NCBI GenBank assembly: GCA_964247055.1
Contig: OZ176053.1
Location: forward strand, 11,780,001-11,844,000
DNA length: 64,000 nucleotides
Source: Paragordius varius
Taxonomy: Eukaryota; Animalia; Nematomorpha
Direction: 5' to 3'
Under the pieces are notes generated by a model that was not told where the DNA came from, ran no database searches, and was given only the letters and a program-made list of their open reading frames with translations. Made by a program: the position numbers and the translations under genes. Of this stretch, positions 34,301 to 63,541 are shown in pieces (the stretch's first letter is position 1; every line of letters begins with the position of its first letter).

Positions 34301-37300
34301 ATCCAACGTTAATACGAGAAAAAGAAATTACTACCAAAGAAACTTTTGAAGAGACGCAAAATACCATAAATAAATATCTTTTGGAAGAATCTTTAAGTCA
34401 CACAGGTAAAAACTAATAACTACAAAATGGTTTTTGGTATTAAGCAGGGATGTCTAACATGCGGCCTTCCGAGACATTATGTGCGGCTCGCGAAAGAAAT
34501 AAAATACAATATTTCAAAAATATGCTCCCAAAATCTTAATAAAAATTATGTTATCAAATTTTCTGAATGATTATATATAACTGGCAACAAACTAGAAAAA
34601 ATGTTAAATTTTGTTTGCATTTTTGATAATTACGTTCGAAATCTAAGATATTTATTAATGCATAATATTTCGGATGCGGCTTTCCGAGTTTTTCAGTGAA
34701 AATGCGGTTCCCCAGTCTATTTGTGTTGGACACGCCTAGTATTAAGGACAATTGGGTAGAATTTACCCATCTATGTAACGATACTTAAGCTATTAAGAAT
34801 TTAACCATTTTAAGGTCTTTTAATAAATTTAAAAATTTTTGCTGTAAATGGTATGCTTAATGAAGATTGTTGTGATTGAATATATGTACCGTTTATTTAT
34901 TATATATTTTGTCAAAATTTTTATTTTTCGCCAATGTTAAAACTAAAATAAATTATAATAATATTATTTTGTGATATTTTAACTTCAAATTAATTTATGA
35001 CCACAATTTTTTATTGGCTAGACTCTTTTAGAAAAGAACCACAATTAGAAATACACAGAGAAAAACCTCACCTAGAACATGAGATAATTCTTCATGAACA
35101 TCCTAAACCAAACATTACAAGTTATCATTCTTTTATTGTATTTTGAGAATATATCGTTAAAAAGGATCAAAAGCTTATAAATTATATATCTATAAATTCT
35201 TATCTTTATAAAAACTATTTATATAATTACCTATTAGTTGATGCAACAATAGAGCATCCGACAAAACCGTTAATTAATGTTGACTACAAAGTTACAACCG
35301 AAACTAAAGAAGACACCGCAGTTTCTGTTAAAAGGTATCATGAATTTTGTAAGCAAGCCATTAAATTTTTGAAGCATTAATTTTTTTATACGATTATTAA
35401 ATTTAAATAGAAACAAACCCATAGAAACCCATACAACCGTGCTCATTGAAAAAATACCCCAATTTCAAAGGCATAATATTATTTTAATAAAAAAAATAAT
35501 GAAAAACGTCGTATTATTGTTTTAGTTATAAATATTAGTTTTATCTAGATTAATTAATAAATATTTTTTTAGCGATCGCGAGCATATGGAAATTTCTGAA
35601 AACGAAGAAATATATAAGGGTGAGTTTACATATATTTTTAATAAATTTAATGTAATCTAATGGTTTATAATATTTAGAAATTCATACGCCACCACCATCC
35701 AAACCGTTATATCTTGTGCCCATTAATACCGGTAATTTTATCATTAAGTGTGCAGATGATATGCATGAATTTATAAATTATAAAATTGAAACCGAGATTG
35801 GGTCAAACCTTGTTATAGAAATTACAAATCTTAATCCTAAAAGAGTTATGTTATACAAAGATCAAAAACCTATTGTTTCATCGAAAATTATTATTGAACC
35901 CAGCGAAAATGGCATATTTATATGTTTCAACGATATCACAGAAACTGATATTGGCGTTTATGAGTTAAAAACAGAAGATCGTGACTATTTTTTTGAATTA
36001 GTTGTAAAAGATCATATAATGAGTGCTAATAAAATAGATAAAATGATTATTGAAAGTTGTCTGGGAGATACTGTGGAAATTTCTTTGAATGCCGATAAAC
36101 CTCTAAAACAATGGGATTGGTATAAGGATAATAAAAAATTGGTGAATACAGACAAATATCAATGCGATGTCATAGATAAAAATTATATAATAGTGATACA
36201 TAATGTGGATTTTGAGGATCAAGGATTTTATAATTTAAGGCATGAAAGAGGAAATATTTTAGTAGAATTAGTTGTAAATGAAATCCCTTTAACCGACCAA
36301 ACAAAAGAAGTGGATGTCAAAGTATTGTCCAAAATTTATGAATCGGAAAATTTAAGTAATGTATGGCAATCGGAAAAAAAGGAAGTAATTGAATTGACTT
36401 CAGAAAAAACCATATTTTGCCAAAAGCAGAAAACTGAATACGGTTATAATAAGAATCTAACCTATCTGCATCATAATGAAGCAGCAATCTCCGCGGTTAA
36501 ATATTTGAATCAAATGGAACTTGTTAATGGAAATTTTATAGATAAGAATCAACAAATTAATATCAATGAAAGAGGTTTAGATCAACTTTAATATATATAT
36601 AGAAGAGAAAAATGAATTAAAGAAAGTAGAAAAAATAAATGCCTACTTAGGCGATACGGTTGAGATATCTGTTAGTCTGTCTCGCTATATCGAAGATGTC
36701 AAATGGCGCAAGGATAATATTGAGATATTGGAAGATGAACGGGTTAGGTTTGTACAGGAAGGCCTTGTTTACAAATTGGTAATTGGCAAGGTAGATGTAG
36801 AAGACAAGGGCGTGTACAGCCTTGAATTCGAAGGTCAACAAGTGAAAACAGAGGTGGTGATCCACGGTATCCATAAATGTTCTTATAATAATAATTAGAA
36901 GTGCCGGTCGAAAAGATGGAAGAAATTAATGTAGTCGAAGTTGAGGAGGGTGGCCGACTTGATTTGACAGTCACCTTGCCTCACATAGTCGACAAGGTGA
37001 TTTGGAAAAAGGACGAAACTGAGATTTTGACGGATGAACGCATCTTGTTTCGTCCTGAAGGTGTTACGCAAAGATTGGTGATATCCAAAGCTACTCACCA
37101 CGATTCCGGTGTCTACACGCTCGAGTTTGAGGGCGAAGAGGTCAAAACGCACGTCAAAATCAAAGGTTTTATCGTTCACGCTAATGTTTTATTAGAAATA
37201 TCAGTCGAAAATTTGGAGGAAATTCAAGTCATCGAAGCTGATGTCGGTGCTACGCTCGAGATATCCGTTACTCTGTCTCGCGATATCAAAGATGTCAAAT

Positions 37301-40300
37301 GGCGCAAGGATAATATTGAGATATTGGAAGATGAACGGGTTAGGTTTGTACAGGAAGGCCTTGTTTACAAATTGGTAATTGGCAAGGTAGATGTAGAAGA
37401 CAAGGGCGTGTACAGCCTTGAATTCGAAGGTCAACAAGTGAAAACAGAGGTGGTGATCCACGGTATCCATAAATGTTCTTATAATAATAATTAGAAGTGC
37501 CGGTCGAAAAGATGGAAGAAATTAATGTAGTCGAAGTTGAGGAGGGTGGCCGACTTGATTTGACAGTCACCTTGCCTCACATAGTCGACAAGGTGATTTG
37601 GAAAAAGGACGAAACTGAGATTTTGACGGATGAACGCATCTTGTTTCGTCCTGAAGGTGTTACGCAAAGATTGGTGATATCCAAAGCTACTCCCCACGAT
37701 TCCGGTGTCTACACGCTCGAGTTTGAGGGCGAAGAGGTCAAAACGCACGTCAAAATCAAAGGTTTTATCGTTCACGCTAATGTTTTATTAGAAATATCAG
37801 TCGAAAATTTGGAGGAAATTCAAGTCATCGAAGCTGATGTCGGTGCTACGCTCGAGATATCCGTTACTCTGTCTCGCGATATCAAAGATGTCAAATGGCG
37901 CAAGGATAATATTGAGATATTGGAAGATGAACGGGTTAGGTTTGTACAGGAAGGCCTTGTTTACAAATTGGTAATTGGCAAGGTAGATGTAGAAGACAAG
38001 GGCGTGTACAGCCTTGAATTCGAAGGTCAACAAGTGAAAACAGAGGTCGTGATCCACGGTATCCATAAATGTTCTTATAATAATAATTAGAAGTGCCGGT
38101 CGAAAAGATGGAAGAAATTAATGTAGTCGAAGTTGAGGAGGGTGGCCGACTTGATTTGACAGTCACCTTGCCCATAGTCGACAAGGTGATTTGGAAGAAG
38201 GACGAAACTGAGATTTTGACGGATGAACGCATCTCGTTCCGTCCTGAAGGTGTTACGCAAAGATTGGTAATATCCAAAGCTACTCCCCACGATTCCGGTG
38301 TCTACACGCTCGAGTTTGAGGGCGAAGAGGTCAAAACGCACGTCAAAATCAAAGGTTTTATCGTTCACGCTAATGTTTTATTAGAAATACCAGTCGAAAA
38401 TTTGGAGGAAATTCAAGTCATCGAAGCTGATGTCGGTGCTACGCTCGAGATATCCGTTACTCTGTCTCGCGATATCAAAGATGTCAAATGGCGCAAGGAT
38501 AATATTGAGATATTGGAAGATGAACGGGTTAGGTTTGTACAGGAAGGCCTTGTTTACAAATTGGTAATTGGCAAGGTAGATGTAGAAGACAAGGGCGTGT
38601 ACAGCCTTGAATTCGAAGGTCAACAAGTGAAAACAGAGGTCGTGATCCACGGTATCCATAAATGTTCTTATAATAATAATTAGAAGTGCCGGTCGAAAAG
38701 ATGGAAGAAATTAATGTAGTCGAAGTTGAGGAGGGTGGCCGACTTGATTTGACAGTCACCTTGCCTCACATAGTCGACAAGGTGATTTGGAAGAAGGACG
38801 AAACTGAGATTTTGACGGATGAACGCATCTCGTTCCGTCCTGAAGGTGTTACGCAAAGATTGGTGATATCCAAAGCTACTCCCCACGATTCCGGTGTCTA
38901 CACGCTCGAGTTTGAGGGCGAAGAGGTCAAAACGCACGTCAAAATCAAAGGTTTTATCGTTCACGCTAATGTTTTATTAGAAATACCAGTCGAAAATTTG
39001 GAGGAAATTCAAGTCATCGAAGCTGATGTCGGTGCTACGCTCGAGATATCCGTTACTCTGTCTCGCGATATCAAAGATGTCAAATGGCGCAAGGATAATA
39101 TTGAGATATTGGAAGATGAACGGGTTAGGTTTGTACAGGAAGGCCTTGTTTACAAATTGGTAATTGGCAAGGTAGATGTAGAAGACAAGGGCGTGTACAG
39201 CCTTGAATTCGAAGGTCAACAAGTGAAAACAGAGGTCGTGATCCACGGTATCCATAAATGTTCTTATAATAATAATTAGAAGTGCCGGTCGAAAAGATGG
39301 AAGAAATTAATGTAGTCGAAGTTGAGGAGGGTGGCCGACTTGATTTGACAGTCACCTTGCCTCACATAGTCGACAAGGTGATTTGGAAGAAGGACGAAAC
39401 TGAGATTTTGACGGATGAACGCATCTCGTTCCGTCCTGAAGGTGTTACGCAAAGATTGGTGATATCCAAAGCTACTCCCCACGATTCCGGTGTCTACACG
39501 CTCGAGTTTGAGGGCGAAGAGGTCAAAACGCACGTCAAAATCAAAGGTTTTATCGTTCACGCTAATGTTTTATTAGAAATACCAGTCGAAAATTTGGAGG
39601 AAATTCAAGTCATCGAAGCTGATGTCGGTGCTACGCTCGAGATATCCGTTACTCTGTCTCGCGATATCAAAGATGTCAAATGGCGCAAGGATAATATTGA
39701 GATATTGGAAGATGAACGGGTTAGGTTTGTACAGGAAGGCCTTGTTTACAAATTGGTAATTGGCAAGGTAGATGTAGAAGACAAGGGCGTGTACAGCCTT
39801 GAATTCGAAGGTCAACAAGTGAAAACAGAGGTCGTGATCCACGGTATCCATAAATGTTCTTATAATAATAATTAGAAGTGCCGGTCGAAAAGATGGAAGA
39901 AATTAATGTAGTCGAAGTTGAGGAGGGTGGCCGACTTGATTTGACAGTCACCTTGCCTCACATAGTCGACAAGGTGATTTGGAAGAAGGACGAAACTGAG
40001 ATTTTGACGGATGAACGCATCTCGTTCCGTCCTGAAGGTGTTACGCAAAGATTGGTGATATCCAAAGCTACTCCCCACGATTCCGGTGTCTACACGCTCG
40101 AGTTTGAGGGCGAAGAGGTCAAAACGCACGTCAAAATCAAAGGTTTTATCGTTCACGCTAATGTTTTATTAGAAATACCAGTCGAAAATTTGGAGGAAAT
40201 TCAAGTCATCGAAGCTGATGTCGGTGCTACGCTCGAGATATCCGTTACTCTGTCTCGCGATATCAAAGATGTCAAATGGCGCAAGGATAATATTGAGATA

Positions 40301-43300
40301 TTGGAAGATGAACGGGTTAGGTTTGTACAGGAAGGCCTTGTTTACAAATTGGTAATTGGCAAGGTAGATGTAGAAGACAAGGGCGTGTACAGCCTTGAAT
40401 TCGAAGGTCAACAAGTGAAAACAGAGGTCGTGATCCACGGTATCCATAAATGTTCTTATAATAATAATTAGAAGTGCCGGTCGAAAAGATGGAAGAAATT
40501 AATGTAGTCGAAGTTGAGGAGGGTGGCCGACTTGATTTGACAGTCACCTTGCCTCACATAGTCGACAAGGTGATTTGGAAGAAGGACGAAACTGAGATTT
40601 TGACGGATGAACGCATCTCGTTCCGTCCTGAAGGTGTTACGCAAAGATTGGTGATATCCAAAGCTACTCCCCACGATTCCGGTGTCTACACGCTCGAGTT
40701 TGAGGGCGAAGAGGTCAAAACGCACGTCAAAATCAAAGGTTTTATCGTTCACGCTAATGTTTTATTAGAAATACCAGTCGAAAATTTGGAGGAAATTCAA
40801 GTCATCGAAGCTGATGTCGGTGCTACGCTCGAGATATCCGTTACTCTGTCTCGAGATATCAAAGATGTCAAATGGCGCAAGGATAATATTGAGATATTGG
40901 AAGATGAACGGGTTAGGTTTGTACAGGAAGGCCTTGTTTACAAATTGGTAATTGGCAAGGTAGATGTAGAAGACAAGGGCGTGTACAGCCTTGAATTCGA
41001 AGGTCAACAAGTGAAAACAGAGGTCGTGATCCACGGTATCCATAAATGTTCTTATAATAATAATTAGAAGTGCCGGTCGAAAAGATGGAAGAAATTAATG
41101 TAGTCGAAGTTGAGGAGGGTGGCCGACTTGATTTGACAGTCACCTTGCCTCACATAGTCGACAAGGTGATTTGGAAGAAGGACAAAACTGAGATTTTGAC
41201 GGATGAACGCATCTCGTTCCGTCCTGAAGGTGTTACGCAAAGATTGGTGATATCCAAAGCTACTCCCCACGATTCCGGTGTCTACACGCTCGAGTTTGAG
41301 GGCGAAGAGGTCAAAACGCACGTCAAAATCAAAGGTTTTATCGTTCACGCTAATGTTTTATTAGAAATACCAGTCGAAAATTTGGAGGAAATTCAAGTCA
41401 TCGAAGCTGATGTCGGTGCTACGCTCGAGATATCCGTTACTCTGTCTCGCGATATCAAAGATGTCAAATGGCGCAAGGATAATATTGAGATATTGGAAGA
41501 TGAACGGGTTAGGTTTGTACAGGAAGGCCTTGTTTACAAATTGGTAATTGGCAAGGTAGATGTAGAAGACAAGGGCGTGTACAGCCTTGAATTCGAAGGT
41601 CAACAAGTGAAAACAGAGGTCGTGATCCACGGTATCCATAAATGTTCTTATAATAATAATTAGAAGTGCCGGTCGAAAAGATGGAAGAAATTAATGTAGT
41701 CGAAGTTGAGGAGGGTGGCCGACTTGATTTGACAGTCACCTTGCCTCACATAGTCGACAAGGTGATTTGGAAGAAGGACGAAACTGAGATTTTGACGGAT
41801 GAACGCATCTCGTTCCGTCCTGAAGGTGTTACGCAAAGATTGGTGATATCCAAAGCTACTCCCCACGATTCCGGTGTCTACACGCTCGAGTTTGAGGGCG
41901 AAGAGGTCAAAACGCACGTCAAAATCAAAGGTTTTATCGTTCACGCTAATGTTTTATTAGAAATACCAGTCGAAAATTTGGAGGAAATTCAAGTCATCGA
42001 AGCTGATGTCGGTGCTACGCTCGATATATCCGTTACTCTGTCTCGAGATATCAAAGATGTCAAATGGCGCAAGGATAATATTGAGATATTGGAAGATGAA
42101 CGGGTTAGGTTTGTACAGGAAGGCCTTGTTTACAAATTGGTAATTGGCAAGGTAGATGTAGAAGACAAGGGCGTGTACAGCCTTGAATTCGAAGGTCAAC
42201 AAGTGAAAACAGAGGTCGTGATCCACGGTATCCATAAATGTTCTTATAATAATAATTAGAAGTGCCGGTCGAAAAGATGGAAGAAATTAATGTAGTCGAA
42301 GTTGAGGAGGGTGGCCGACTTGATTTGACAGTCACCTTGCCTCACATAGTCGACAAGGTGATTTGGAAGAAGGACGAAACTGAGATTTTGACGGATGAAC
42401 GCATCTCGTTCCGTCCTGAAGGTGTTACGCAAAGATTGGTGATATCCAAAGCTACTCCCCACGATTCCGGTGTCTACACGCTCGAGTTTGAGGGCGAAGA
42501 GGTCAAAACGCACGTCAAAATCAAAGGTTTTATCGTTCACGCTAATGTTTTATTAGAAATACCAGTCGAAAATTTGGAGGAAATTCAAGTCATCGAAGCT
42601 GATGTCGGTGCTACGCTCGAGATATCCGTTACTCTGTCTCGCGATATCAAAGATGTCAAATGGCGCAAGGATAATATTGAGATATTGGAAGATGAACGGG
42701 TTAGGTTTGTACAGGAAGGCCTTGTTTACAAATTGGTAATTGGCAAGGTAGATGTAGAAGACAAGGGCGTGTACAGCCTTGAATTCGAAGGTCAACAAGT
42801 GAAAACAGAGGTCGTGATCCACGGTATCCATAAATGTTCTTATAATAATAATTAGAAGTGCCGGTCGAAAAGATGGAAGAAATTAATGTAGTCGAAGTTG
42901 AGGAGGGTGGCCGACTTGATTTGACAGTCACCTTGCCTCACATAGTCGACAAGGTGATTTGGAAGAAGGACGAAACTGAGATTTTGACGGATGAACGCAT
43001 CTCGTTCCGTCCTGAAGGTGTTACGCAAAGATTGGTGATATCCAAAGCTACTCCCCACGATTCCGGTGTCTACACGCTCGAGTTTGAGGGCGAAGAGGTC
43101 AAAACGCACGTCAAAATTAAAGGTTTTATCGTTCACGCTAATGTTTTATTAGAAATATCAGTCGAAAATTTGGAGGAAATTCAAGTCATCGAAGCTGATG
43201 TCGGTGCTACGCTCGAGATATCCGTTACTCTGTCTCGCGAGATCAAAGATGTCAAATGGCGCAATGATAATATTGAGATATTGGAAGATGAACGGGTTAG

Positions 43301-46300
43301 GTTTGTACAGGAAGGCCTTGTTTACAAATTGGTAATTGGCAAGGTAGATGTAGATGACAAGGGCGTGTACAGCCTTGAATTCGAAGGTCAACAAGTGAAA
43401 ACAGAGGTCGTGATCCACGGTATCCATAAATGTTCTTATAATAATAATTAGAAGTGCCGGTCGAAAAGATGGAAGAAATTAATGTAGTCGAAGTTGAGGA
43501 GGGTGGCCGACTTGATTTGACAGTCACCTTGCCTCACATAGTCGACAAGGTGATTTGGAAGAAGGACGAAACTGAGATTTTTACGGATGAACACATCTCG
43601 TTCCGTCCTGAAGGTGTTACGCAAAGATTGGTGATATCCAAAGCTACTCCCCACGATTCCGGTGTCTACACGCTCGAGTTTGAGGGCGAAGAGGTCAAAA
43701 TGCACGTCAAAATCAAAGGTTTCATCGTTCACGCTAATGTTTTATTAGAAATACCAGTCGAAAATTTGGAGGAAATTCAAGTCATCGAAGCTGATGTCGG
43801 TGCTACGCTCGAGATATCCGTTACTCTGTCTCGCGATATCAAAGATGTCAAATGGCGCAAGGATAATATTGAGATATTGGAAGATGAACGGGTTAGGTTT
43901 GTACAGGAAGGCCTTGTTTACAAATTGGTAATTGGCAAGGTAGATGTAGAAGACAAGGGCGTGTACAGCCTTGAATTCGAAGGTCAACAAGTGAAAACAG
44001 AGGTCGTGATCCACGGTATCCATAAATGTTCTTATAATAATAATTAGAAGTGCCGGTCGAAAAGATGGAAGAAATTAATGTAGTCGAAGTTGAGGAGGGT
44101 GGCCGACTTGATTTGACAGTCACCTTGCCTCACATAGTCGACAAGGTGATTTGGAAGAAGGACGAAACTGAGATTTTGACGGATGAACGCATCTCGTTCC
44201 GTCCTGAAGGTGTTACGCAAAGATTGGTGATATCCAAAGCTACTCCCCACGATTCCGGTGTCTACACGCTCGAGTTTGAGGGCGAAGAGGTCAAAACGCA
44301 CGTCAAAATCAAAGGTTTCATCGTTCACGCTAATGTTTTATTAGAAATACCAGTCGAAAATTTGGAGGAAATTCAAGTCATCGAAGCTGATGTCGGTGCT
44401 ACGCTCGAGATATCCGTTACTCTGTCTCGCGATATCAAAGATGTCAAATGGCGCAAGGATAATATTGAGATATTGGAAGATGAACGGGTTAGGTTTGTAC
44501 AGGAAGGCCTTGTTTACAAATTGGTAATTGGCAAGGTAGATGTAGAAGACAAGGGCGTGTACAGCCTTGAATTCGAAGGTCAACAAGTGAAAACAGAGGT
44601 CGTGATCCACGGTATCCTTAAATCTTCTTATAATAATAATTAGAAGTGCCGGTCGAAAAGATGGAAGAAATTAATGTAGTCGAAGTTGAGGAGGGTGGCC
44701 GACTTGATTTGACAGTCACCTTGCCTCACATAGTCGACAAGGTGATTTGGAAGAAGGACGAAACTGAGATTTTGACGGATGAACGCATCTCGTTCCGTCC
44801 TGAAGGTGTTACGCAAAGATTGGTGATATCCAAAGCTACTCCTCACGATTCCGGTGTCTACACGCTCGAGCTTGAGGGCGAAGAGGTCAAAACGCACGTC
44901 AAAATCAAAGGTTTCATCGTTCACGCTAATGTTTTATTAGAAATACCAGTCGAAAATTTGGAGGAAATTCAAGTCATCGAAGCTGATGTCGGTGCTACGC
45001 TCGAGATATCCGTTACTCTGTCTCGCGATATCAAAGATGTCAAATGGCGCAAGGATAATATTGAGATATTGGAAGATGAACGGGTTAGGTTTGTACAGGA
45101 AGGCCTTGTTTACAAATTGGTAATTGGCAAGGTAGATGTAGAAGACAAGGGCGTGTACAGCCTTGAATTCGAAGGTCAACAAGTGAAAACAGAGGTCGTG
45201 ATCCACGGTATCCATAAATGTTCTTATAATAATAATTAGAAGTGCCGGTCGAAAAGATGGAAGAAATTAATGTAGTCGAAGTTGAGGAGGGTGGCCGACT
45301 TGATTTGACAGTCACCTTGCCTCACATAGTCGACAAGGTGATTTGGAAGAAGGACGAAACTGAGATTTTGACGGATGAACGCATCTCGTTCCGTCCTGAA
45401 GGTGTTACGCAAAGATTGGTGATATCCAAAGCTACTCCCCACGATTCCGGTGTCTACACGCTCGAGTTTGAGGGCGAAGAGGTCAAAACGCACGTCAAAA
45501 TCAAAGGTTTTATCGTTCACGCTAATGTTTTATTAGAAATACCAGTCGAAAATTTGGAGGAAATTCAAGTCATCGAAGCTGATGTCGGTGCTACGCTCGA
45601 GATATCCGTTACTCTGTCTCGCGATATCAAAGATGTCAAATGGCGCAAGGATAATATTGAGATATTGGAAGATGAACGGGTTAGGTTTGTACAGGAAGGC
45701 CTTGTTTACAAATTGGTAATTGGCAAGGTAGATGTAGAAGACAAGGGCGTGTACAGCCTTGAATTCGAAGGTCAACAAGTGAAAACAGAGGTCGTGATCC
45801 ACGGTATCCATAAATGTTCTTATGATAATAATTAGAAGTGCCGGTCGAAAAGATGGAAGAAATTAATGTAGTCGAAGTTGAGGAGGGCGGCCGACTTGAT
45901 TTGACAGTCACCTTGCCTCACATAGTCGACAAGGTGATTTGGAAGAAGGACGAAACTGAGATTTTGACGGATGAACGCATCTCGTTCCGTCCTGAAGGTG
46001 TTACGCAAAGATTGGTGATATCCAAAGCTACTCCCCACGATTCCGGTGTCTACACGCTCGAGTTTGAGGGCGAAGAGGTCAAAACGCACGTCAAAATCAA
46101 AGGTTTCATCGTTCACGCTAATGTTTTATTAGAAATACCAGTTGAAAATTTGGAGGAAATTCAAGTCATCGAAGCTGATGTCGGTGCTACGCTCGAGATA
46201 TCCGTTACTCTGTCTCGCGATATCAAAGATGTCAAATGGCGCAAGGATAATATTGAGATATTGGAAGATGAACGGGTTAGGTTTGTACAGGAAGGCCTTG

Positions 46301-49300
46301 TTTACAAATTGGTAATTGGCAAGGTAGATGTAGAAGACAAGGGCGTGTACAGCCTTGAATTCGAAGGTCAACAAGTGAAAACAGAGGTCGTGATCCACGG
46401 TATCCATAAATGTTCTTATAATAATAATTAGAAGTGCCGGTCGAAAAGATGGAAGAAATTAATGTAGTCGAAGTTGAGGAGGGTGGCCGACTTGATTTGA
46501 CAGTCACCTTGCCTCACATAGTCGACAAGGTGATTTGGAAGAAGGACAAAACTGAGATTTTGACGGATGAACGCATCTCGTTCCGTCCTGAAGGTGTTAC
46601 GCAAAGATTGGTGATATCCAAAGCTACTCCCCACGATTCCGGTGTCTACACGCTCGAGTTTGAGGGCGAAGAGGTCAAAACGCACGTCAAAATCAAAGGT
46701 TTTATCGTTCACGCTAATGTTTTATTAGAAATACCAGTCGAAAATTTGGAGGAAATTCAAGTCATCGAAGCTGATGTCGGTGCTACGCTCGAGATATCCG
46801 TTACTCTGTCTCGCGATATCAAAGATGTCAAATGGCGCAAGGATAATATTGAGATATTGGAAGATGAACGGGTTAGGTTTGTACAGGAAGGCCTTGTTTA
46901 CAAATTGGTAATTGGCAAGGTAGATGTAGAAGACAAGGGCGTGTACAGCCTTGAATTCGAAGGTCAACAAGTGAAAACAGAGGTCGTGATCCACGGTATC
47001 CATAAATGTTCTTATAATAATAATTAGAAGTGCCGGTCGAAAAGATGGAAGAAATTAATGTAGTCGAAGTTGAGGAGGGTGGCCGACTTGATTTGACAGT
47101 CACCTTGCCTCACATAGTCGACAAGGTGATTTGGAAGAAGGACGAAACTGAGATTTTGACGGATGAACGCATCTCGTTCCGTCCTGAAGGTGTTACGCAA
47201 AGATTGGTGATATCCAAAGCTACTCCCCACGATTCCGGTGTCTACACGCTCGAGTTTGAGGGCGAAGAGGTCAAAACGCACGTCAAAATCAAAGGTTTTA
47301 TCGTTCACGCTAATGTTTTATTAGAAATACCAGTCGAAAATTTGGAGGAAATTCAAGTCATCGAAGCTGATGTCGGTGCTACGCTCGAGATATCCGTTAC
47401 TCTGTCTCGCGATATCAAAGATGTCAAATGGCGCAAGGATAATATTGAGATATTGGAAGATGAACGGGTTAGGTTTGTACAGGAAGGCCTTGTTTACAAA
47501 TTGGTAATTGGCAAGGTAGATGTAGAAGACAAGGGCGTGTACAGCCTTGAATTCGAAGGTCAACAAGTGAAAACAGAGGTCGTGATCCACGGTATCCATA
47601 AATGTTCTTATAATAATAATTAGAAGTGCCGGTCGAAAAGATGGAAGAAATTAATGTAGTCGAAGTTGAGGAGGGTGGCCGACTTGATTTGACAGTCACC
47701 TTGCCTCACATAGTCGACAAGGTGATTTGGAAGAAGGACGAAACTGAGATTTTGACGGATGAACGCATCTCGTTCCGTCCTGAAGGTGTTACGCAAAGAT
47801 TGGTGATATCCAAAGCTACTCCCCACGATTCCGGTGTCTACACGCTCGAGTTTGAGGGCGAAGAGGTCAAAACGCACGTCAAAATCAAAGGTTTCATCGT
47901 TCACGCTAATGTTTTATTAGAAATACCAGTCGAAAATTTGGAGGAAATTCAAGTCATCGAAGCTGATGTCGGTGCTACGCTCGAGATATCCGTTACTCTG
48001 TCTCGCGATATCAAAGATGTCAAATGGCGCAAGGATAATATTGAGATATTGGAAGATGAACGGGTTAGGTTTGTACAGGAAGGCCTTGTTTACAAATTGG
48101 TAATTGGCAAGGTAGATGTAGAAGACAAGGGCGTGTACAGCCTTGAATTCGAAGGTCAACAAGTGAAAACAGAGGTCGTGATCCACGGTATCCATAAATG
48201 TTCTTATAATAATAATTAGAAGTGCCGGTCGAAAAGATGGAAGAAATTAATGTAGTCGAAGTTGAGGAGGGTGGCCGACTTGATTTGACAGTCACCTTGC
48301 CTCACATAGTCGACAAGGTGATTTGGAAGAAGGACGAAACTGAGATTTTGACGGATGAACGCATCTCGTTCCGTCCTGAAGGTGTTACGCAAAGATTGGT
48401 GATATCCAAAGCTACTCCCCACGATTCCGGTGTCTACACGCTCGAGTTTGAGGGCGAAGAGGTCAAAACGCACGTCAAAATCAAAGGTTTCATCGTTCAC
48501 GCTAATGTTTTATTAGAAATACCAGTCGAAAATTTGGAGGAAATTCAAGTCGAAGCTGATGTCGGTGCTACGCTCGAGATATCCGTTACTCTGTCTCGCG
48601 ATATCAAAGATGTCAAATGGCGCAAGGATAATATTGAGATATTGGAAGATGAACGGGTTAGGTTTGTACAGGAAGGCCTTGTTTACAAATTGGTAATTGG
48701 CAAGGTAGATGTAGAAGACAAGGGCGTGTACAGCCTTGAATTCGAAGGTCAACAAGTGAAAACAGAGGTCGTGATCCACGGTATCCATAAATGTTCTTAT
48801 AATAATAATTAGAAGTGCCGGTCGAAAAGATGGAAGAAATTAATGTAGTCGAAGTTGAGGAGGGTGGCCGACTTGATTTGACAGTCACCTTGCCTCACAT
48901 AGTCGACAAGGTGATTTGGAAGAAGGACGAAACTGAGATTTTGACGGATGAACGCATCTCGTTCCGTCCTGAAGGTGTTACGCAAAGATTGGTGATATCC
49001 AAAGCTACTCCCCACGATTCCGGTGTCTACACGCTCGAGTTTGAGGGCGAAGAGGTCAAAACGCACGTCAAAATCAAAGGTTTCATCGTTCACGCTAATG
49101 TTTTATTAGAAATACCAGTCGAAAATTTGGAGGAAATTCAAGTCATCGAAGCTGATGTCGGTGCTACGCTCGAGATATCCGTTACTCTGTCTCGCGATAT
49201 CAAAGATGTCAAATGGCGCAAGGATAATATTGAGATATTGGAAGATGAACGGGTTAGGTTTGTACAGGAAGGCCTTGTTTACAAATTGGTAATTGGCAAG

Positions 49301-52300
49301 GTAGATGTAGAAGACAAGGGCGTGTACAGCCTTGAATTCGAAGGTCAACAAGTGAAAACAGAGGTCGTGATCCACGGTATCCATAAATGTTCTTATAATA
49401 ATAATTAGAAGTGCCGGTCGAAAAGATGGAAGAAATTAATGTAGTCGAAGTTGAGGAGGGTGGCCGACTTGATTTGACAGTCACCTTGCCTCACATAGTC
49501 GACAAGGTGATTTGGAAGAAGGACGAAACTGAGATTTTGACGGATGAACGCATCTCGTTCCGTCCTGAAGGTGTTACGCAAAGATTGGTGATATCCAAAG
49601 CTACTCCCCACGATTCCGGTGTCTACACGCTCGAGTTTGAGGGCGAAGAGGTCAAAACGCACGTCAAAATCAAAGGTTTCATCGTTCACGCTAATGTTTT
49701 ATTAGAAATACCAGTCGAAAATTTGGAGGAAATTCAAGTCATCGAAGCTGATGTCGGTGCTACGCTCGAGATATCCGTTACTCTGTCTCGCGATATCAAA
49801 GATGTCAAATGGCGCAAGGATAATATTGAGATATTGGAAGATGAACGGGTTAGGTTTGTACAGGAAGGCCTTGTTTACAAATTGGTAATTGGCAAGGTAG
49901 ATGTAGAAGACAAGGGCGTGTACAGCCTTGAATTCGAAGGTCAACAAGTGAAAACAGAGGTCGTGATCCACGGTATCCATAAATGTTCTTATAATAATAA
50001 TTAGAAGTGCCGGTCGAAAAGATGGAAGAAATTAATGTAGTCGAAGTTGAGGAGGGTGGCCGACTTGATTTGACAGTCACCTTGCCTCACATAGTCGACA
50101 AGGTGATTTGGAAGAAGGACGAAACTGAGATTTTGACGGATGAACGCATCTCGTTCCGTCCTGAAGGTGTTACGCAAAGATTGGTGATATCCAAAGCTAC
50201 TCCCCACGATTCCGGTGTCTACACGCTCGAGTTTGAGGGCGAAGAGGTCAAAACGCACGTCAAAATCAAAGGTTTCATCGTTCACGCTAATGTTTTATTA
50301 GAAATACCAGTCGAAAATTTGGAGGAAATTCAAGTCATCGAAGCTGATGTCGGTGCTACGCTCGAGATATCCGTTACTCTGTCTCGCGATATCAAAGATG
50401 TCAAATGGCGCAAGGATAATATTGAGATATTGGAAGATGAACGGGTTAGGTTTGTACAGGAAGGCCTTGTTTACAAATTGGTAATTGGCAAGGTAGATGT
50501 AGAAGACAAGGGCGTGTACAGCCTTGAATTCGAAGGTCAACAAGTGAAAACAGAGGTCGTGATCCACGGTATCCATAAATGTTCTTATAATAATAATTAG
50601 AAGTGCCGGTCGAAAAGATGGAAGAAATTAATGTAATCGAAGTTGAGGAGGGTGGCCGACTTGATTTGACAGTCACCTTGCCTCACATAGTCGACAAGGT
50701 GATTTGGAAGAAGGACGAAACTGAGATTTTGACGGATGAACGCATCTCGTTCCGTCCTGAAGGTGTTACGCAAAGATTGGTGATATCCAAAGCTACTCCC
50801 CACGATTCCGGTGTCTACACGCTCGAGTTTGAGGGCGAAGAGGTCAAAGCGCACGTCAAAATCAAAGGTTTTATCGTTCACGCTGATGTTTTATTAGAAA
50901 TACCAGTCGAAAATTTGGAGGAAATTCAAGTCATCGAAGCTGATGTCGGTGCTACGCTCGAGATATCCGTTACTCTGTCTCGCGATATCAAAGATGTCAA
51001 ATGGCGCAAGGATAATATTGAGATATTGGAAGATGAACGGGTTAGGTTTGTACAGGAAGGCCTTGTTTACAAATTGGTAATTGGCAAGGTAGATGTAGAA
51101 GACAAGGGCGTGTACAGCCTTGAATTCGAAGGTCAACAAGTGAAAACAGAGGTCGTGATCCACGGTATCCTTAAATCTTCTTATAATAATAATTAGAAGT
51201 GCCGGTCGAAAAGATGGAAGAAATTAATGTAATCGAAGTTGAGGAGGGTGGCCGACTTGATTTGACAGTCACCTTGCCTCACATAGTCGACAAGGTGATT
51301 TGGAAGAAGGACGAAACTGAGATTTTGACGGATGAACGCATCTCGTTCCGTCCTGAAGGTGTTACGCAAAGATTGGTGATATCCAAAGCTACTCCCCACG
51401 ATTCCGGTGTCTTCACGCTCGAGTTTGAGGGCGAAGAGGTCAAAACGCACGTCAAAATCAAAGGTTTTATCGTTCACGCTGATGTTTTATTAGAAATACC
51501 AGTCGAAAATTTGGAGGAAATTCAAGTCATCGAAGCTGATGTCGGTGCTACGCTCGAGATATCCGTTACTCTGTCTCGCGATATCAAAGATGTCAAATGG
51601 CGCAAGGATAATATTGAGATATTGGAAGATGAACGGGTTAGGTTTGTGCAGGAAGGCCTTGTTTACAAATTGGTAATTGGCAAGGTAGATGTAGAAGACA
51701 AGGGCGTGTACAGCCTTGAATTCGAAGGTCAACAAGTGAAAACAGAGGTCGTGATCCACGGTATCCTTAAATCTTCTTATAATAATAATTAGAAGTGCCG
51801 GTCGAAAAGATTGATTATATTGAAAATGAATATAACATCACTGATTTATCCAATTCAACGAATCCATCGATCGTTCCAACACCTCTCACGCCTGTCACTA
51901 ATGTTTCTTCATACTTGCTGGATTATTATGGTTATATTATTTTTTAGTTTAGATGTTGAACTTCCCTCTTTGATAACCACTCAGGGAGGTAAAATTCAAA
52001 TCACGATACAATCCCCGCTTAAGTTAGCCGATGTTAAAATTTATAAAAACAACTATGAGATTTTTCAAAATACGCATAACCATTTTTATGCAAATGATAC
52101 GGAATATTATTATGAGATACCTCATATGATTCCTACTGATCGAGGGTTTTATACCTTTTCAGTTAATGGTTTCAGAATTAGAACTAACATACTATTAAAC
52201 GGTTTTTTAAAATAAAATATAATAGAGCTATATAAAAATATATCTGATGAAAAGTCTTATACTATGATTGCAACTAAACATTCCAAAATAAAAGATATTA

Positions 52301-54278
52301 TTATTACAACCAAAATAATAAACCATTCCTGCATATCTGATGCACTAGGTATCGTAGGAATATTTATTTAACGTGTGAAAATATTGTATTTTTTGGTAAA
52401 TGATTATATCATATATTAGCATCTCAAACTATCCAAACGATTGAGGCTGAAGAGGGATCAACTTTGGAACTCACTATAAATCTCTCTCATGCGCCATCAC
52501 AAATTCAATGGCGCAAAGATGACAAAATCATAGAACACGATCACAGATATGAAATCATTAATAAAGGTGTTCACCAGGAATTCATTATTCATGATGTTAA
52601 TAAAAATGATGAAGGGACATATGACATGGAGTTTGATGGACATAAAATAACAACTAGAGTGGAAGTCCTTTGTAAATATTATACTTTAGTCAATAAATTT
52701 AGGTAGCTCTCATTATATCTTTTTGTCAAATATATGTGCTAATAGAAACTATATAATTTAAATTTTTATATATTCAAACAACCTAAAAACTCGAATAATT
52801 ATTACGTTCTAGTGATAATAGTTATATCGTTTGAATGCATACTATATATATATATATATTATGATTAATTTATCCGCTATCCAAAAAATTATATGCAAAA
52901 TATTATTATGGGGCAAATTTTGTGGTTAAAAACTTTTGATAGATCGAATGATTAGATTTTAAAAACTTAAAAAAAATATTTTTGATTAAGGCCATATAAT
53001 AATAGTATTATTAAAAGGTACAAATGTAGACTGACAAATATCAGTTTTTTTTCACCGAATACATCCCTTTTTAGTCAAAAATATTTTTGTTGAACGTATT
53101 AATAAATTAGTAGGTTATTTAAAAGTAATTTTGCTAACCTACTGTATATATGTACACATATATATTTACTCTTAAATAACTACCATATTGATCAAATATA
53201 TAAAATTTATTTCAACATTCTCTGGCTAATACATTGTTTCATAAAATGCATAAAACCATTAAAACTTATCACTTAAATTTTCGAAATTATAGTCTTGTAA
53301 TTCATTTTTTATAACTAATTAAGTAAATATCTAATTTTTTTAACTAAATCCATAAAGTTTAAGGATTTACTCTCTAATCCCCTAATACGATCATTTACCC
53401 TAGCAGTCTATTATTATGTTAAATAAATTTTACTGAATTTGCAAACACTTTTATCCTTTAAATTTTTATAACAAGAATGTATTTCGGAGTAAGTTTTATT
53501 TTGAAAGCCTAAATTTAAAATATAATTGTAAAAGTGCTAAATATATGTATCAAACGGATATTTTTATATTAAACAAAATAACATTAATTTTTAACAGTTT
53601 TGTAACTTCTCCAACCTAAAATTCGCGTAACTCCTAAATCGATTCAAAAATTGTTAAAAATTTACTGTGTCATGTTTAAATTCATTTAAAGTTCTTGATT
53701 TTTTAATTATAGTATGTTTGTCCAAAAAATCATAAAGTGCTAATATAATAAAATCAAGAAAGGCTCACATATAGATGTTACATTTCAAATATTTTTATTA
53801 CATATTTTATATGATTTAAATTATCCCAATTTATCCTACAAATAACTTAATTATAAGCCTTTAACTGTTTATAATTTTTTAAATGTTATTTATTGTCAGT
53901 TTGTTGTTTACCCTATAATGACTATAATAACTTATCACCGTGATAGCTCCACCACAACCCCAAACTACTGTAACAAAAACTGTAGAAGTTGAAGAAGATG
54001 AACGATTAGAATTAAGCGTAATATTGCCCCGTCCAACCCCAACACAATGGAAAAAAGATAATGTCCCCATTGTCGAGAGTGTCCATGTTTATCCGAAACG
54101 TGAAGGATTGACGGAAAAATTGGTTATAGAAACTGTTAGGTCGGCGGATAGTGGCATTTATACATTGGAGTTCGAAGATAAAAAGATACCCACCCATGTG
54201 AATGTTATCAAACGCGAAGGTAATTTCAATATAAATTCATATTATGTTTTTACAACAATCACATCAATACTTTTTAAA

Positions 54279-54319
<41 letters not shown>

Positions 54320-57300: not shown

Positions 57301-58920
57301 TATTAGCACCGACTAAACCTGTGTCCGAAACCAAAACCATAGAAATTGATGAGGGTGAAACACTCGAATTAACTGTTGATTTGCCCCAAAGAGTATCAAC
57401 AGCCAGTTGGAGGAAAGAAAATACTGAATTGTTAAGTGATGATCGAATACACATAGTAAGAGATGATGTTACATACAAATTGGTTGTGGAAAGAATCAGA
57501 AAAACCGATGAAGGGACATATACCTTAGCCTATGACAATGAACAAATTAATACGCATGTTATTGTTCATGGTAATATATTTTCAAAGATGTTTAAAGTGT
57601 AAAATCATGTGAAATTTTTCGTTTCAGCAGCTACTGACAACAGTGGTAGCTAGGGGGAAAGCGGGCTGATGCACCGAGCGCCATAATTAAAGGTGCGCCG
57701 AATTTTAAATTTTTTTGATTTTATTTCAAAAAAATAGGTTATTAAAAGTAAGTAATTAAATAGTACATGAAAAATCATCCATTTATGAGTGGTCATGCCT
57801 GTTTGAATTTGATTATTGTTTTAAAGGGTGTTGCATGGATGGGGAGGGGCGCCATCACGGTTTCATTCACTGGGTGCCAGAAATTCAAGCTACGCCTCTG
57901 ACTGATAAACTAAATTCCTTAAATGATTATTTTTATGTGTCAAAAAATGATATTGTCGAATTTTCCTAAACAAAAAAATATTTCTATTCCAATTTTAAAT
58001 TCTCATCAATTTACATATGTGATATATTAAAAAATATAATTTTTGCATAAATAATTATAGAAAAACCGGAATCCACTATACAGACTATAGAGGCAGAGGA
58101 AGGGTCAACGCTAGAAATAAGCGTTAACCTTTCCGAATTCCCTAGACAAATTAAATGGTCGAAAGAAACAACTCCATTGTATGAGAACGAAAGGGTCAAA
58201 TTCTTTGATAACGGAACTCATCAACAATTAATGATTACCAATGTTGTAAAATCAGATGAAGGTCTTTATCAAATGGATTTCGATAATCACAAACTCTTGA
58301 CTCGTGTTATAGTAACACGTAAGTTTTTAATTTAAAAATGAGGATTTTTGTTTGATTTGGATTATATAAGTTGAAATCATACAAGCAAAACGCAAAAATA
58401 TAAAGACAAATATTTTCTAAAAAAACATATTTTAGACCATGATTTTTAAATATAAATCATCGTTTATGTGTTGCATAATAAAGGATAGAGATATTGATTG
58501 GTAAAGAACAAATTGTATATTTAGGAAATATCGTGGTTTAGATGGTATGCTTGTCGATTTAAAAATATATTTGTCTCTTAGTTTTATTTTTTGACTGTAT
58601 AATTTTAATTCTTACTGTAAATATTGAAATCAATATAGCTGTATCACAACCCCAAATTTCGGAAACAAAAACTGTCGAAGTTGAAGAAGATGAACGTTTG
58701 GAGTTAAGTGTTTTACTCCCACGCCCAACACCTACTCAATGGAAAAAAGATGATGTTCCCATTGTGGAAAGTGTCCATATTTACCCAAAACGCGAGGGCC
58801 TCACAGAGAAATTAGTTATAGAAAGCGTAAAATCGGAAGATAGTGGAATTTATACGTTGGAATTTGAGAATAAGATAGTACCCACACAAGTCATTGTCAT
58901 TGAACATGAGGGTATTTTAT

Positions 58921-58958
<38 letters not shown>

Positions 58959-62804: not shown

Positions 62805-63541
62805 CTTATATTTTTTATCACTTGATTGTATATCATCATTTTTTTATCTGATTACCCTTAATCTATTTAATGTTAATTCTTGTCCTATAAATTTCATTCA
62901 TTAGATTGGCATGTAAAATTACTTAAAATCCCATAAAATCTCAAAATTTAATTAGTTTATAATTTATTGTATGTTTCATTTAATATATTTAGTTAACTTT
63001 GACGGTTTTGAAAAACATATTATGTCTTTTTTTTATCATAACATGTCGATGATTTCAAAATAAGTTATATTAATAAATACTACATATTTTAGATTTTTTG
63101 TGATATTTACAGCTCAGAAATCAGTTCTTTTTGAGTTTTTATGGCTATTAAAATTTAAAGATATCAATTAGGATTAGAAGTAAAAATAAATAAGTCATGA
63201 AAATATCAAATTTTTTGTTTATTACTTTGTCAGAGAAATTAATTATCACTTAAATATATAACACTACTCAACAAGGTTTTGCATCACCCCCTTTTTTGCA
63301 TTTTCTGTTACCTAAGGCTTATTTTTACTTTTTTATGATCGGCTGGCGCGGAGTAGAACTTGGTATGTTTACTCCCGAGATGTGTATACCTTTTAATTTT
63401 ATAGGAAATCTTGTATTCGGTGATAAATGGATTTTATCTATTATCTTCATCAATCCATTGTCAGTTTTATCATTCGTAAGATACTGATTCTTTCTATAGA
63501 TTCTTATATCTCAGTACACCACCACTAAGCCAAATTCCTTC

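What the first reader, a model, noticed from the sequence alone, without database searches (positions are those of the whole stretch)
36661..51811. 15-kb homogenised array of 25 two-exon units encoding 50 near-identical Ig domains inside one gene
Sequence: a 596-bp unit made of 267+30+267+32 nt, with exons and introns equally homogenised, adding ~4,450 aa. Knowledge: adjacent Ig domains in titins are normally highly diverged, which is thought to limit inter-domain misfolding; here every second domain is essentially identical, and A/B alternation may be what keeps direct neighbours different. Inference: a recently expanded, copy-number-variable molecular ruler or spring that could set sarcomere length or extensibility.
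Basis: partly seen in the sequence, partly recalled or inferred. Interest (0 to 1): 0.9.

Follow-up and report, generated by a model that had tools for sequence, protein, structure and literature searches.

The report
Homogenised 50-Ig-domain array in hairworm titin-like gene
A giant muscle-type protein gene of a horsehair-worm-like animal contains at least 25 almost identical copies of a two-exon unit encoding alternating A and B immunoglobulin domains; a second hairworm genus has the same array, homogenised separately, so it is old, kept uniform by recombination and conserved as protein, which makes it a natural test of the rule that neighbouring domains must differ in order to fold.

Summary
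Window 36655-51811 holds 25.4 head-to-tail copies of a 596-bp unit: exon B 267 nt, intron 30 nt, exon A 267 nt, intron 32 nt. Mean pairwise identity is 99.3%. Spliced, the array gives 13,344 nt (4,447 aa) with no stop codon. Both exons encode cysteine-free I-set Ig domains whose closest solved relatives are titin, obscurin and MyBP-C.

It is not an assembly over-expansion. Contigs of four public read sets all show the 596-bp head-to-tail joint and at least 10-31 times the flank depth.

The array did not arise recently. Gordionus, another nematomorph genus, has an orthologous A/B array of at least 27 units of 678 bp, with introns of 65 and 79 nt, 99.96% self-identical. It is only 72-74% identical in protein to this one, with saturated synonymous sites. 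That pattern is concerted evolution under purifying selection. A and B are the best-conserved parts of the gene; neighbouring Ig domains are 38-50% identical and Fn3 domains 50-61%.

The gene is titin-family-like, with Ig runs followed by titin A-band-type Fn3 domains. NCBI names the Gordionus piece "obscurin-like".

Splicing, expression, exact copy number and mechanical role remain untested, because no RNA data could be laid. First readers noted the same stretch before on this same window (s1-252908, s1-253206), not on other DNA.

The parts
35671..36574 (+). Upstream exon (open reading frame from 35671) with two diverged Ig domains of the same one-exon-per-domain subfamily plus unique sequence
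   Evidence: Open frame; Pfam I-set; custom HMM hits at 35773-36009 and 36025-36279
36575..36602 (+). 28-nt GT-AG phase-1 intron joining the upstream exon in frame to the first A exon
   Evidence: In-frame splice solution, with the translation continuous into the A domain
36603..36866 (+). Exon A0: chimeric first A-type Ig exon. The 5' ~55 nt are diverged and the rest is homogenised with the array (82% aa identity to the A consensus overall)
   Evidence: the read joint 37250->36655 marks where homology starts
36867..51792 (+). Core array: 26 copies of the 32-nt intron, and 25 copies each of the B exon (267 nt), the 30-nt intron and the A exon (267 nt). The first unit starts with its B exon at 36899 and the last A exon ends at 51760
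38684..38950 (+). Representative B exon (unit 4, identical to the consensus): one I-set Ig domain, phase 1-1, no cysteine
   Evidence: Pfam I-set E=1.6e-9; PDB sequence hits to MyBP-C, myomesin, titin and obscurin
38951..38980 (+). 30-nt intron (GT..AG, CTAAT branch-like motif). It is in frame and stop-free, so retaining it would insert 10 residues
   Evidence: The in-frame property is not shared by the 79-nt Gordionus counterpart
38981..39247 (+). Representative A exon (unit 4): one I-set Ig domain, phase 1-1, no cysteine
   Evidence: Pfam I-set E=8e-9; PDB sequence hits to MyBP-C and titin
39248..39279 (+). 32-nt intron (GT..AG). It contains a stop and shifts the frame, so it must be removed for the frame to stay open
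51793..51930 (+). Exon after the array: the first 19 nt match the B exon, then a unique ~40-residue linker follows
   Evidence: a loose end in X1 reads runs from the array into this sequence
51931..51952 (+). Candidate 22-nt GT-AG intron, the only GT-AG solution that keeps the frame open into the next Ig exon
   Evidence: Enumeration of splice solutions; inferred, no RNA evidence
51953..60806 (+). Thirteen further single-exon Ig domains of the same subfamily, diverged (22-43% aa identity to A or B) and separated by introns of hundreds of bases. They include older duplicates, e.g. 53958 vs 54978 at 90% nt identity
60831..62458 (+). Three fibronectin type III domains in four exons, closest in sequence to titin A-band Fn3 domains. 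The gene probably continues beyond
   Evidence: Pfam fn3; PDB titin hits; collinear with Gordionus protein P0032

Best explanation
The array is a genuine coding segment of a titin-family giant Ig/Fn3 protein gene in a nematomorph (horsehair-worm) genome. It encodes a rod of at least 50 cytoplasmic-type I-set Ig domains in strict A-B-A-B order with almost no linker between domains. The DNA is kept uniform by in-register unequal crossing-over and/or gene conversion with a period of two exons (596 bp). That process homogenises introns and exons alike, leaves the edge units most diverged, and lets copy number drift. The A/B pair and its tandem amplification predate the split from Gordionus. Since then each lineage has homogenised its own array (concerted evolution), while purifying selection kept both domain sequences unusually constant. 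The phase-1/phase-1 exons are most likely spliced one after another through ultra-short, intron-defined introns of 30 and 32 nt. The product would then carry about 4,450 extra residues, roughly 200 nm of folded tandem Ig, acting as an extensible or spacing segment of a muscle filament protein. Shown here: the anatomy, the Ig fold, multi-copy status in independent reads, the orthologous array, and dN much lower than dS. Inferred: the recombination mechanism, constitutive splicing, muscle expression and the mechanical role.
For: Anatomy and open frame. Ig identity: Pfam I-set; PDB sequence hits to titin, obscurin and MyBP-C; an AlphaFold2 model of the Gordionus B-A didomain with pLDDT 87.6 showing two beta-sandwiches; top Foldseek matches are titin I-band tandem Ig structures, TM up to 0.70. 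Reality of the array: all four read sets show the joint 37250->36655 ('goes back 596'). Array contig depth against flank is 11,159 vs ~780 in X1, 11,057 vs ~480 in X3, 107.6 vs ~3.5 in X5 and 24 vs ~2.3 in X6. An X1 loose end reads into the right boundary. Only 9 of the 25 assembled units carry the exact 325-nt path of the 11,159-depth contig, so these ratios are lower bounds. Orthologous array: P0001 and P0153 from Gordionus sp. m RMFG-2023, annotated as spliced proteins by two pipelines. Contig L001 consists of 27 units of 678 bp at 99.96% identity, with the introns in the same phase-1 positions but 65 and 79 nt long. Selection: A-A is 74% and B-B 72% identical in protein, against 50-58% for A-B in any combination. 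pS is ~0.75 (saturated) and pN 0.17. A and B are more conserved than the neighbouring Ig domains (38-50%) and the 1:1 Fn3 exons (50-61%). Recombination signature: divergence rises with distance along the array, from 3.1 differences at lag 1 to 12 at lag 24; variants are shared by neighbouring units; introns and exons are equally uniform. GC3 is 0.45-0.56 in the array against mostly 0.26-0.35 in paralogous exons, while minor variants run 17 GC-to-AT against 8 AT-to-GC, as GC-biased conversion would produce. Gene continuity: in-frame 28-nt and 22-nt GT-AG introns at the two flanks, and all Ig HMM hits lie on the + strand.
Against: There is no RNA evidence for this species. Splicing of the 30/32-nt introns and inclusion of all units are therefore inferred from frame logic, from the Gordionus annotations and from conservation. 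Contig word depth is not a copy number, and the summed values (40-64 thousand) would imply 50-130 units rather than 25. The true length is thus uncertain, and further copies elsewhere in the genome cannot be excluded. Variation among the units gives only weak evidence of current constraint: 15 nonsynonymous against 9 synonymous changes. Orthology to titin, sallimus, twitchin or obscurin is unresolved, and no kinase or RhoGEF domain lies in the window. The Gordionus array sits on unplaced repeat-only contigs, so its linkage to the Gordionus flank protein P0032 is inferred, not shown.
Confidence: 0.7

Rival explanations
1. Variable-inclusion cassette. The array is real, but most units are skipped or alternatively included. 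Every exon is phase 1-1 and all splice sites are identical, so any donor can join any later acceptor in frame. This would give a ladder of isoforms of different length, as in the differentially spliced tandem-Ig and PEVK regions of vertebrate titin. The genomic copy number would then set only the maximum length.
For: All exons are symmetric in phase and the splice sites are identical. The human TTN segmental-duplication exons are tissue-specifically spliced (PMC9142044). No RNA data contradict this reading.
Against: Introns of 30-32 nt favour pairing of the nearest sites (intron definition; own knowledge). Both Gordionus annotation pipelines joined consecutive exons. Strong protein conservation shows that at least some units are translated.
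Confidence: 0.2
2. Assembly artefact. The assembler inflated a short repeat of one to a few units into 25 copies.
For: Near-identical 596-bp repeats are hard to assemble. The Gordionus counterpart lies on unplaced repeat-only contigs.
Against: Four read sets from at least three samples show array-to-flank depth ratios of at least 10-31, and all show the head-to-tail joint. The assembled units carry a structured pattern of private and neighbour-shared variants. If anything, the depth suggests more than 25 units.
Confidence: 0.03
3. Neutral or selfish intragenic amplification without function. The units would be a young run of duplicated exons, tolerated or skipped and not maintained by selection.
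For: Among the units, nonsynonymous variants outnumber synonymous ones 15 to 9. Introns are as uniform as exons, which shows a purely DNA-level process.
Against: The same A/B array exists in a genus so distant that synonymous sites are saturated and Fn3 orthologues are only 50-61% identical. Even so, A and B remain 72-74% identical with pN 0.17. Both indels are multiples of three, and no stop occurs in 13.3 kb.
Confidence: 0.04
4. The protein is not sarcomeric. The gene would encode an extracellular or other non-muscle Ig/Fn3 protein (hemicentin-, Dscam- or cuticle-associated type), and the array would serve as a spacer outside muscle.
For: Ig and Fn3 domains are widespread in adhesion molecules. 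Contactin, NCAM and Dscam appear among the weaker hits. Expression was not tested.
Against: A and B contain no cysteine. The best sequence and fold matches are titin, obscurin, MyBP-C and myomesin. The Fn3 exons match titin A-band Fn3 far better than adhesion molecules, e.g. E=2.9e-26 for titin A77-A78 (3lpw) against 3.7e-13 for the best contactin. The best full-length database relatives are obscurins and a titin.
Confidence: 0.03

Closest known systems
[quoted passage not shown]
   Same: A multi-exon block repeated head to tail inside a giant muscle-protein gene. The copies are near-identical, introns included, and are prone to recurrent copy-number change (PMC9142044, PMC9109913).
   Different: Those have 3 copies; this has at least 25 (at least 27 in Gordionus). 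The TTN block encodes disordered PEVK and the NEB block encodes nebulin repeats, not folded Ig domains. Here homogenisation has persisted across genera, and the introns are only 30-32 nt long.
Tandem Ig segments of titin (I-band) and obscurin/UNC-89
   Same: Runs of cysteine-poor I-set Ig domains with very short linkers and one domain per phase-1 exon. They are the best structural matches (7ahs, 5jdd, 9rhk) and the best full-length database hits (obscurins).
   Different: In titin, natural neighbours are diverged (I27-I28 are 24% identical, PMC4660218) and non-neighbours also differ. Here neighbours are 50% identical and every second domain is 99-100% identical.
Bacterial 'Periscope Proteins' and SasG (variable-length rods of near-identical folded domains)
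   Same: Long arrays of highly identical folded domains. Their DNA identity drives changes in repeat number, and they break the rule that adjacent domains share less than 50% identity (PMC8201768). SasG alternates two module types, G5 and E (own knowledge), like the A/B alternation here.
   Different: Those are prokaryotic, intron-less, extracellular wall-anchored stalks. This is a spliced, probably cytoplasmic animal protein. A functional role for length variation is not shown here.
Human LPA kringle IV-2 array (own knowledge, not checked here)
   Same: A two-exon unit repeated tens of times inside one gene. The copies are homogenised, introns included, and copy number varies, with each unit encoding one folded domain.
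   Different: In LPA one unit is one kringle, so direct neighbours are identical. Here one unit is two different Ig domains. The LPA array is primate-specific, whereas this one is shared between nematomorph genera.

Membership tests
Titin-family giant Ig/Fn3 muscle proteins (titin, sallimus, twitchin/projectin) | Long runs of intracellular-type I-set Ig domains | tested here: met
   Pfam I-set hits for A, B and the flanking exons. No cysteine in A or B. AlphaFold2 model plus Foldseek top hits to titin I-band tandems.
Titin-family giant Ig/Fn3 muscle proteins (titin, sallimus, twitchin/projectin) | Fn3 domains of the thick-filament (A-band) type in the same polypeptide | tested here: met
   Three fn3 domains at 60831-62458 on the same strand. 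The best PDB matches are titin A-band Fn3. Gordionus protein P0032 joins the orthologous Ig and Fn3 parts in one model. Continuity with the array is inferred from frame and order.
Titin-family giant Ig/Fn3 muscle proteins (titin, sallimus, twitchin/projectin) | Ser/Thr kinase domain near the C-terminus | not testable with these tools
   The gene runs off the window. No kinase was found in the ORFs scanned, and no annotated full-length protein of this species was found.
Titin-family giant Ig/Fn3 muscle proteins (titin, sallimus, twitchin/projectin) | Expression in muscle and location in the sarcomere | not testable with these tools
   No RNA run holds the sequence.
Obscurin / UNC-89 | Tandem Ig region most similar to that of obscurin | tested here: met
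   After Gordionus, the top hits among 1.84 billion representatives and among giant proteins are vertebrate obscurins at 22-30% identity. NCBI names the Gordionus fragment 'obscurin-like'. The scores are inflated by domain number, so this is resemblance and not orthology.
Obscurin / UNC-89 | SH3-DH-PH RhoGEF cassette and C-terminal kinase(s) | tested here: inconclusive
   None was found in the ten ORFs scanned. The only related hit is a sub-threshold hSH3 match (19.5 bits against a cut-off of 25.7). The rest of the gene lies outside the window.
Intragenic tandem arrays under concerted evolution | Paralogous units within a species far more alike than orthologous units between species | tested here: met
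   Units are 99.3% identical within the window and 99.96% within Gordionus, against 70-71% nt identity between the two. A and B each group across species.
Intragenic tandem arrays under concerted evolution | Non-coding parts of the unit homogenised like the coding parts | tested here: met
   Variable sites are 5 of 62 in introns and 31 of 534 in exons, Fisher p=0.41.
Intragenic tandem arrays under concerted evolution | Copy-number polymorphism between individuals | tested here: inconclusive
   Array-to-flank word-depth ratios range from about 10 to more than 30 (up to 50-130 if summed) across four read sets. Contig depth is a poor measure of copy number, and two of the runs are very shallow.
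Periscope-type variable-length rods | Adjacent folded domains with very high identity (82-100%) | tested here: not met
   Direct neighbours A and B are 50% identical (57% in Gordionus). Only every second domain is identical. This is an analogy, not membership.

The most novel reading that the evidence does not exclude
The strict A/B alternation is selected rather than accidental. By keeping direct neighbours at about 50% identity, it would let an animal expand and contract a fully homogenised Ig spring by recombination without long-lived inter-domain misfolds. The result would be a eukaryotic, intracellular counterpart of bacterial variable-length 'periscope' rods, whose copy number tunes the length or passive elasticity of a muscle filament protein between individuals and species of hairworms. 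The unusually slow protein evolution of A and B relative to the rest of the gene, together with the intron shrinkage to 30-32 nt that would enforce sequential splicing of identical exons, would both be parts of this adaptation.
Probability: 0.2. Interest if true: 0.85.

Novelty: new variant of a known kind. Interest (0 to 1): 0.62.

Why it matters
Protein-folding work on titin holds that neighbouring homologous domains must diverge to avoid stable misfolds and aggregation (PMC4660218). Bacterial periscope proteins are the known exception (PMC8201768). This array is an animal, probably cytoplasmic case in which every second Ig domain is identical and direct neighbours sit right at the 50% limit. 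It has been maintained in at least two genera for long enough to saturate synonymous sites.

That gives a natural (AB)n construct for testing the rule by single-molecule refolding against (A)n and (B)n. It is also a clean example of concerted evolution of folded-domain exons inside a giant muscle gene, with a possible imprint of GC-biased conversion.

On the practical side, such arrays break assemblies and annotations. The Gordionus copies sit on unplaced contigs as "partial" proteins, and the 30/32-nt introns are below what most gene finders accept.

Tried and rejected
- TRF found nothing because the period exceeds its 500-bp limit; a script was used instead.
- The search for homologous proteins with the B+intron+A ORF and with the 696-aa upstream ORF returned nothing. 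The third search, with Gordionus P0153 residues 1-400, gave only vertebrate obscurins and a Lingula titin at 22-29% identity. No other nematomorph array and no annotated protein of the window's own species appeared.
- Both run searches found no RNA run holding the sequence. Reads were laid on four contig sets that behave as DNA, so the splice junctions could not be checked.
- The look-up of encoding contigs could not fetch the Gordionus chromosome locus of P0032. Linkage of the Gordionus array to its flanks therefore remains untested.
- The search of earlier findings by sequence and by array-related words was blank.
- A minus-strand gene was rejected, because there are no Ig hits on that strand.
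- The retained 30-nt intron as a conserved 'linker switch' was rejected. The Gordionus counterpart is 79 nt and would shift the frame, so the in-frame property looks coincidental.
- A/B homogenisation by A-to-B conversion was rejected. Within-species A-B identity (50% and 57%) is no higher than cross-species A-B identity (53-58%).
- A literature search for concerted evolution of obscurin or titin Ig arrays found no description of such an array. The Gordionus genome preprint does not mention titin, obscurin or tandem arrays.


Full report
**1. Observation**

A motif from the B exon recurs 25 times between 36901 and 51199 at 596-bp spacing; two spacings are 593 bp. TRF reported nothing only because its longest period is 500. 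Composition shows a sharp block of 43% GC and positive GC skew at 36-52 kb, inside 26-33% GC flanks.

The 25 units align over 596 columns, of which 36 vary. Units differ from the consensus at 0-6 positions, and the first and last units are the most diverged. Mean pairwise identity is 99.3%.

Each unit is a 267-nt exon (B), a 30-nt GT..AG intron, a 267-nt exon (A) and a 32-nt GT..AG intron. Only removal of the 32-nt intron keeps the frame open. The 30-nt intron is in frame and stop-free.

The spliced array is 13,344 nt, or 4,447 residues, with no stop. The two length variants are in-frame 3-nt deletions. Homology begins inside a first, chimeric A exon at about 36655-36661 and ends 19 nt into a B-like exon at 51811.

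**2. What the exons encode**

Both exons match Pfam I-set above the gathering score. Their closest solved relatives by sequence are MyBP-C, titin, myomesin and obscurin. Neither domain contains a cysteine, as expected of cytoplasmic sarcomeric Ig domains (own knowledge).

An AlphaFold2 model of the spliced Gordionus B-A didomain has mean pLDDT 87.6 and shows two seven-strand sandwiches joined by a short low-confidence stretch. The best Foldseek matches in the PDB are titin I-band tandem Ig structures (7ahs, 5jdd, 2rik; 9rhk at TM 0.70). A and B are 50% identical in protein and 58-60% in DNA.

**3. Gene context**

Open frames on the + strand dominate the whole window, and every Ig HMM hit lies on that strand.

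- Upstream lie classical cysteine-bearing I-set exons, including five Ig modules at 12.0-17.5 kb that are 53-71% identical to each other. A 696-residue exon carries Ig domains and acidic low-complexity sequence.
- From 33.9 kb onward the Ig domains belong to one subfamily with one exon per domain. The array is part of this subfamily, and it continues to 60.8 kb as diverged copies, some of them older duplicates (90% and about 80% nt identity).
- Three Fn3 domains follow at 60.8-62.5 kb. Their closest solved relatives are titin A-band Fn3 domains.
- The array joins its flanks in frame through a 28-nt GT-AG intron on the left and a 22-nt GT-AG intron on the right. The latter is the only GT-AG solution that keeps the frame.

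No kinase or RhoGEF domain lies in the window. The gene is therefore titin-family-like, but its exact orthology is open.

**4. Is the array real?**

Logan contigs of four public runs were laid on 33700-37250, which covers unique flank plus one unit. They cover introns and show no 30/32-nt skips, so they behave as DNA.

All four contain the joint 37250->36655 ("goes back 596"), which is the head-to-tail junction. Word depth compares as follows:

| Run | Flank depth | Array depth (single contig) | Summed array depth |
|---|---|---|---|
| X1 | ~780 | 11,159 (consensus-path contig) | 40-55 thousand |
| X3 | ~480 | 11,057 | 49-64 thousand |
| X5 | ~3.5 | 55.5 and 107.6 | not given |
| X6 | ~2.3 | 24 | not given |

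In the assembly only 9 of 25 units carry the exact 325-nt path of the single X1 contig, so the single-contig ratios (14, 23, 31 and 10) are lower bounds. An X1 loose end reads from the array into the right-boundary sequence.

The runs differ from the window at about 1-1.5% of flank positions, so they are not simply the assembled haplotype. The array is therefore multi-copy in independent samples. The assembled 25 units may even be an underestimate, or the number may vary. The tool's own caveat applies: summed contig depth is not a copy number.

**5. The key comparison**

A search of 1.84 billion representative proteins gave one close hit, P0001 (73% identity). It lacks the ten residues of the 30-nt intron, so it is a spliced product.

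P0001 and the 4,749-residue P0153 are "obscurin-like, partial" proteins of Gordionus sp. m RMFG-2023 (Nematomorpha), called by both the submitters' pipeline and the RefSeq pipeline. The 18.3-kb contig that encodes P0153 consists of nothing but 27 copies of a 678-bp unit at 99.96% identity. That unit is an A exon of 267 nt, a 65-nt intron, a B exon of 267 nt and a 79-nt intron, in the same phase-1 positions.

Window A is 74% identical to Gordionus A, and window B is 72% identical to Gordionus B. Every A-B comparison gives 50-58%. Synonymous sites are saturated (pS about 0.75) while pN is 0.17.

The A/B pair and its amplification therefore predate the split of the two lineages. Each lineage has homogenised its own array, and the protein sequences are under strong purifying selection. 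This is concerted evolution, not a recent expansion.

A second Gordionus protein, P0032, is collinear with window 52-62.5 kb: diverged Ig domains followed by three Fn3 domains. Measured against it, the neighbouring Ig domains are only 38-50% identical and the Fn3 domains 50-61% identical. A and B, at 72-74%, are thus the best-conserved part of the region.

**6. Mechanism of homogenisation**

Introns and exons are equally uniform (Fisher p=0.41). Differences between units grow with their distance along the array, from 3.1 at lag 1 to 12 at lag 24. Variants are shared by adjacent units, for example units 1-2, units 24-25, and an intron variant in units 12-14, 16 and 19-23. This is the pattern expected from in-register unequal crossing-over or conversion.

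Within-species A-B identity is no higher than cross-species A-B identity, so exchange is strictly in register. At 58-60% DNA identity, A and B are too different to recombine with each other. The alternation would therefore persist without selection.

Third-position GC is 0.45 in A and 0.56 in B, against mostly 0.26-0.35 in the paralogous exons. Minor variants run 17 GC-to-AT against 8 AT-to-GC. That is what GC-biased conversion acting against an AT-biased mutation spectrum would give. This point is inference.

**7. Introns**

Earlier notes of this scan on other pieces of the same genome describe a class of 20-32-nt introns in a hairworm-like genome (s1-266886, s1-243091). The 30-, 32-, 28- and 22-nt introns found here fit that class.

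The orthologous Gordionus introns are 65 and 79 nt, so the array introns shrank in this lineage. The in-frame, stop-free state of the 30-nt intron (note s1-253206) is not conserved in Gordionus and is probably coincidental.

**8. Comparison with what is known**

Human TTN and NEB carry intragenic segmental duplications, blocks of 9 and 8 exons repeated three times, with recurrent copy-number changes (PMC9142044, PMC9109913). These have only three copies and do not encode folded Ig domains.

Titin neighbours are diverged (I27-I28 are 24% identical), and this divergence is thought to prevent long-lived misfolds (PMC4660218). Large multidomain proteins usually keep adjacent domains below 50% identity, and bacterial periscope proteins break that rule (PMC8201768).

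The present array sits exactly at 50% for neighbours and at 99-100% for every second domain. I found no paper describing such an array in titin, obscurin or nematomorphs.

**9. Verdict**

- the array is real, coding and titin-like;
- it is ancient and homogenised rather than recently expanded;
- copy-number variation, splicing and mechanical function are untested.

It is best described as a new and extreme variant of known kinds, namely tandem-Ig segments of giant muscle proteins and intragenic arrays under concerted evolution.

Noticed in passing
window 36575-36602 and 51931-51952: The exons flanking the array connect in frame only through GT-AG introns of 28 and 22 nt, further candidates for this genome's ultra-short intron class. 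No RNA evidence is available.
   Followed up: partly
window 12074-17462: Five Ig modules with an unusual long insert between strands are 53-71% identical to each other. Each is preceded by a short exon ending in a similar proline-rich motif. The layout recalls the Ig-plus-linker modules of kettin/sallimus (own knowledge; not tested).
   Followed up: partly
window 53958-54209, 54978-55229, 58650-58901; 55593-55844, 59020-59271: Older duplicates of single Ig exons lie downstream of the array (90%, 78% and 80% nt identity), so this part of the gene has duplicated repeatedly. Gordionus P0032 has its own lineage-specific triplet of near-identical Ig domains.
   Followed up: partly
window 34414-34651 and 35009-35246: These intronic stretches show 2-5 times the flank depth and many loose ends in the read contigs, probably a dispersed repeat. 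At 34912-34991 the reads of X1, X3 and X5 skip 76-78 nt and carry 4-6 other letters instead, an insertion/deletion polymorphism.
   Followed up: no
window 63500-63865: A + strand ORF gives a weak match to the Exo_endo_phos endonuclease domain (E=2.6e-4, below the Pfam cut-off). It is probably the start of a LINE-type retroelement downstream of, or within an intron of, the giant gene.
   Followed up: partly
window 36867-51792 versus the other exons: Third-codon-position GC is 0.45-0.56 in the array exons but mostly 0.26-0.35 in paralogous exons of the same gene, a possible footprint of GC-biased gene conversion.
   Followed up: partly
window 33700-36600 versus runs X1 and X3: Read contigs from two samples of the same labelled organism differ from the window at about 1-1.5% of flank positions, including 14 sites in the 918-nt ORF of the upstream exon (35671-36588). 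Their array consensus matches the window's consensus at every listed site. Either the species is highly polymorphic or the samples come from a different population.
   Followed up: no
L001 and L002 (Gordionus GCA_954871325.2 contigs CATOZP020000103.1 and CATOZP020000102.1): Both contigs are pure array sequence and are unplaced, and the proteins on them are annotated as 'partial'. The Gordionus chromosome-level assembly therefore probably has a gap or collapse at this locus.
   Followed up: partly
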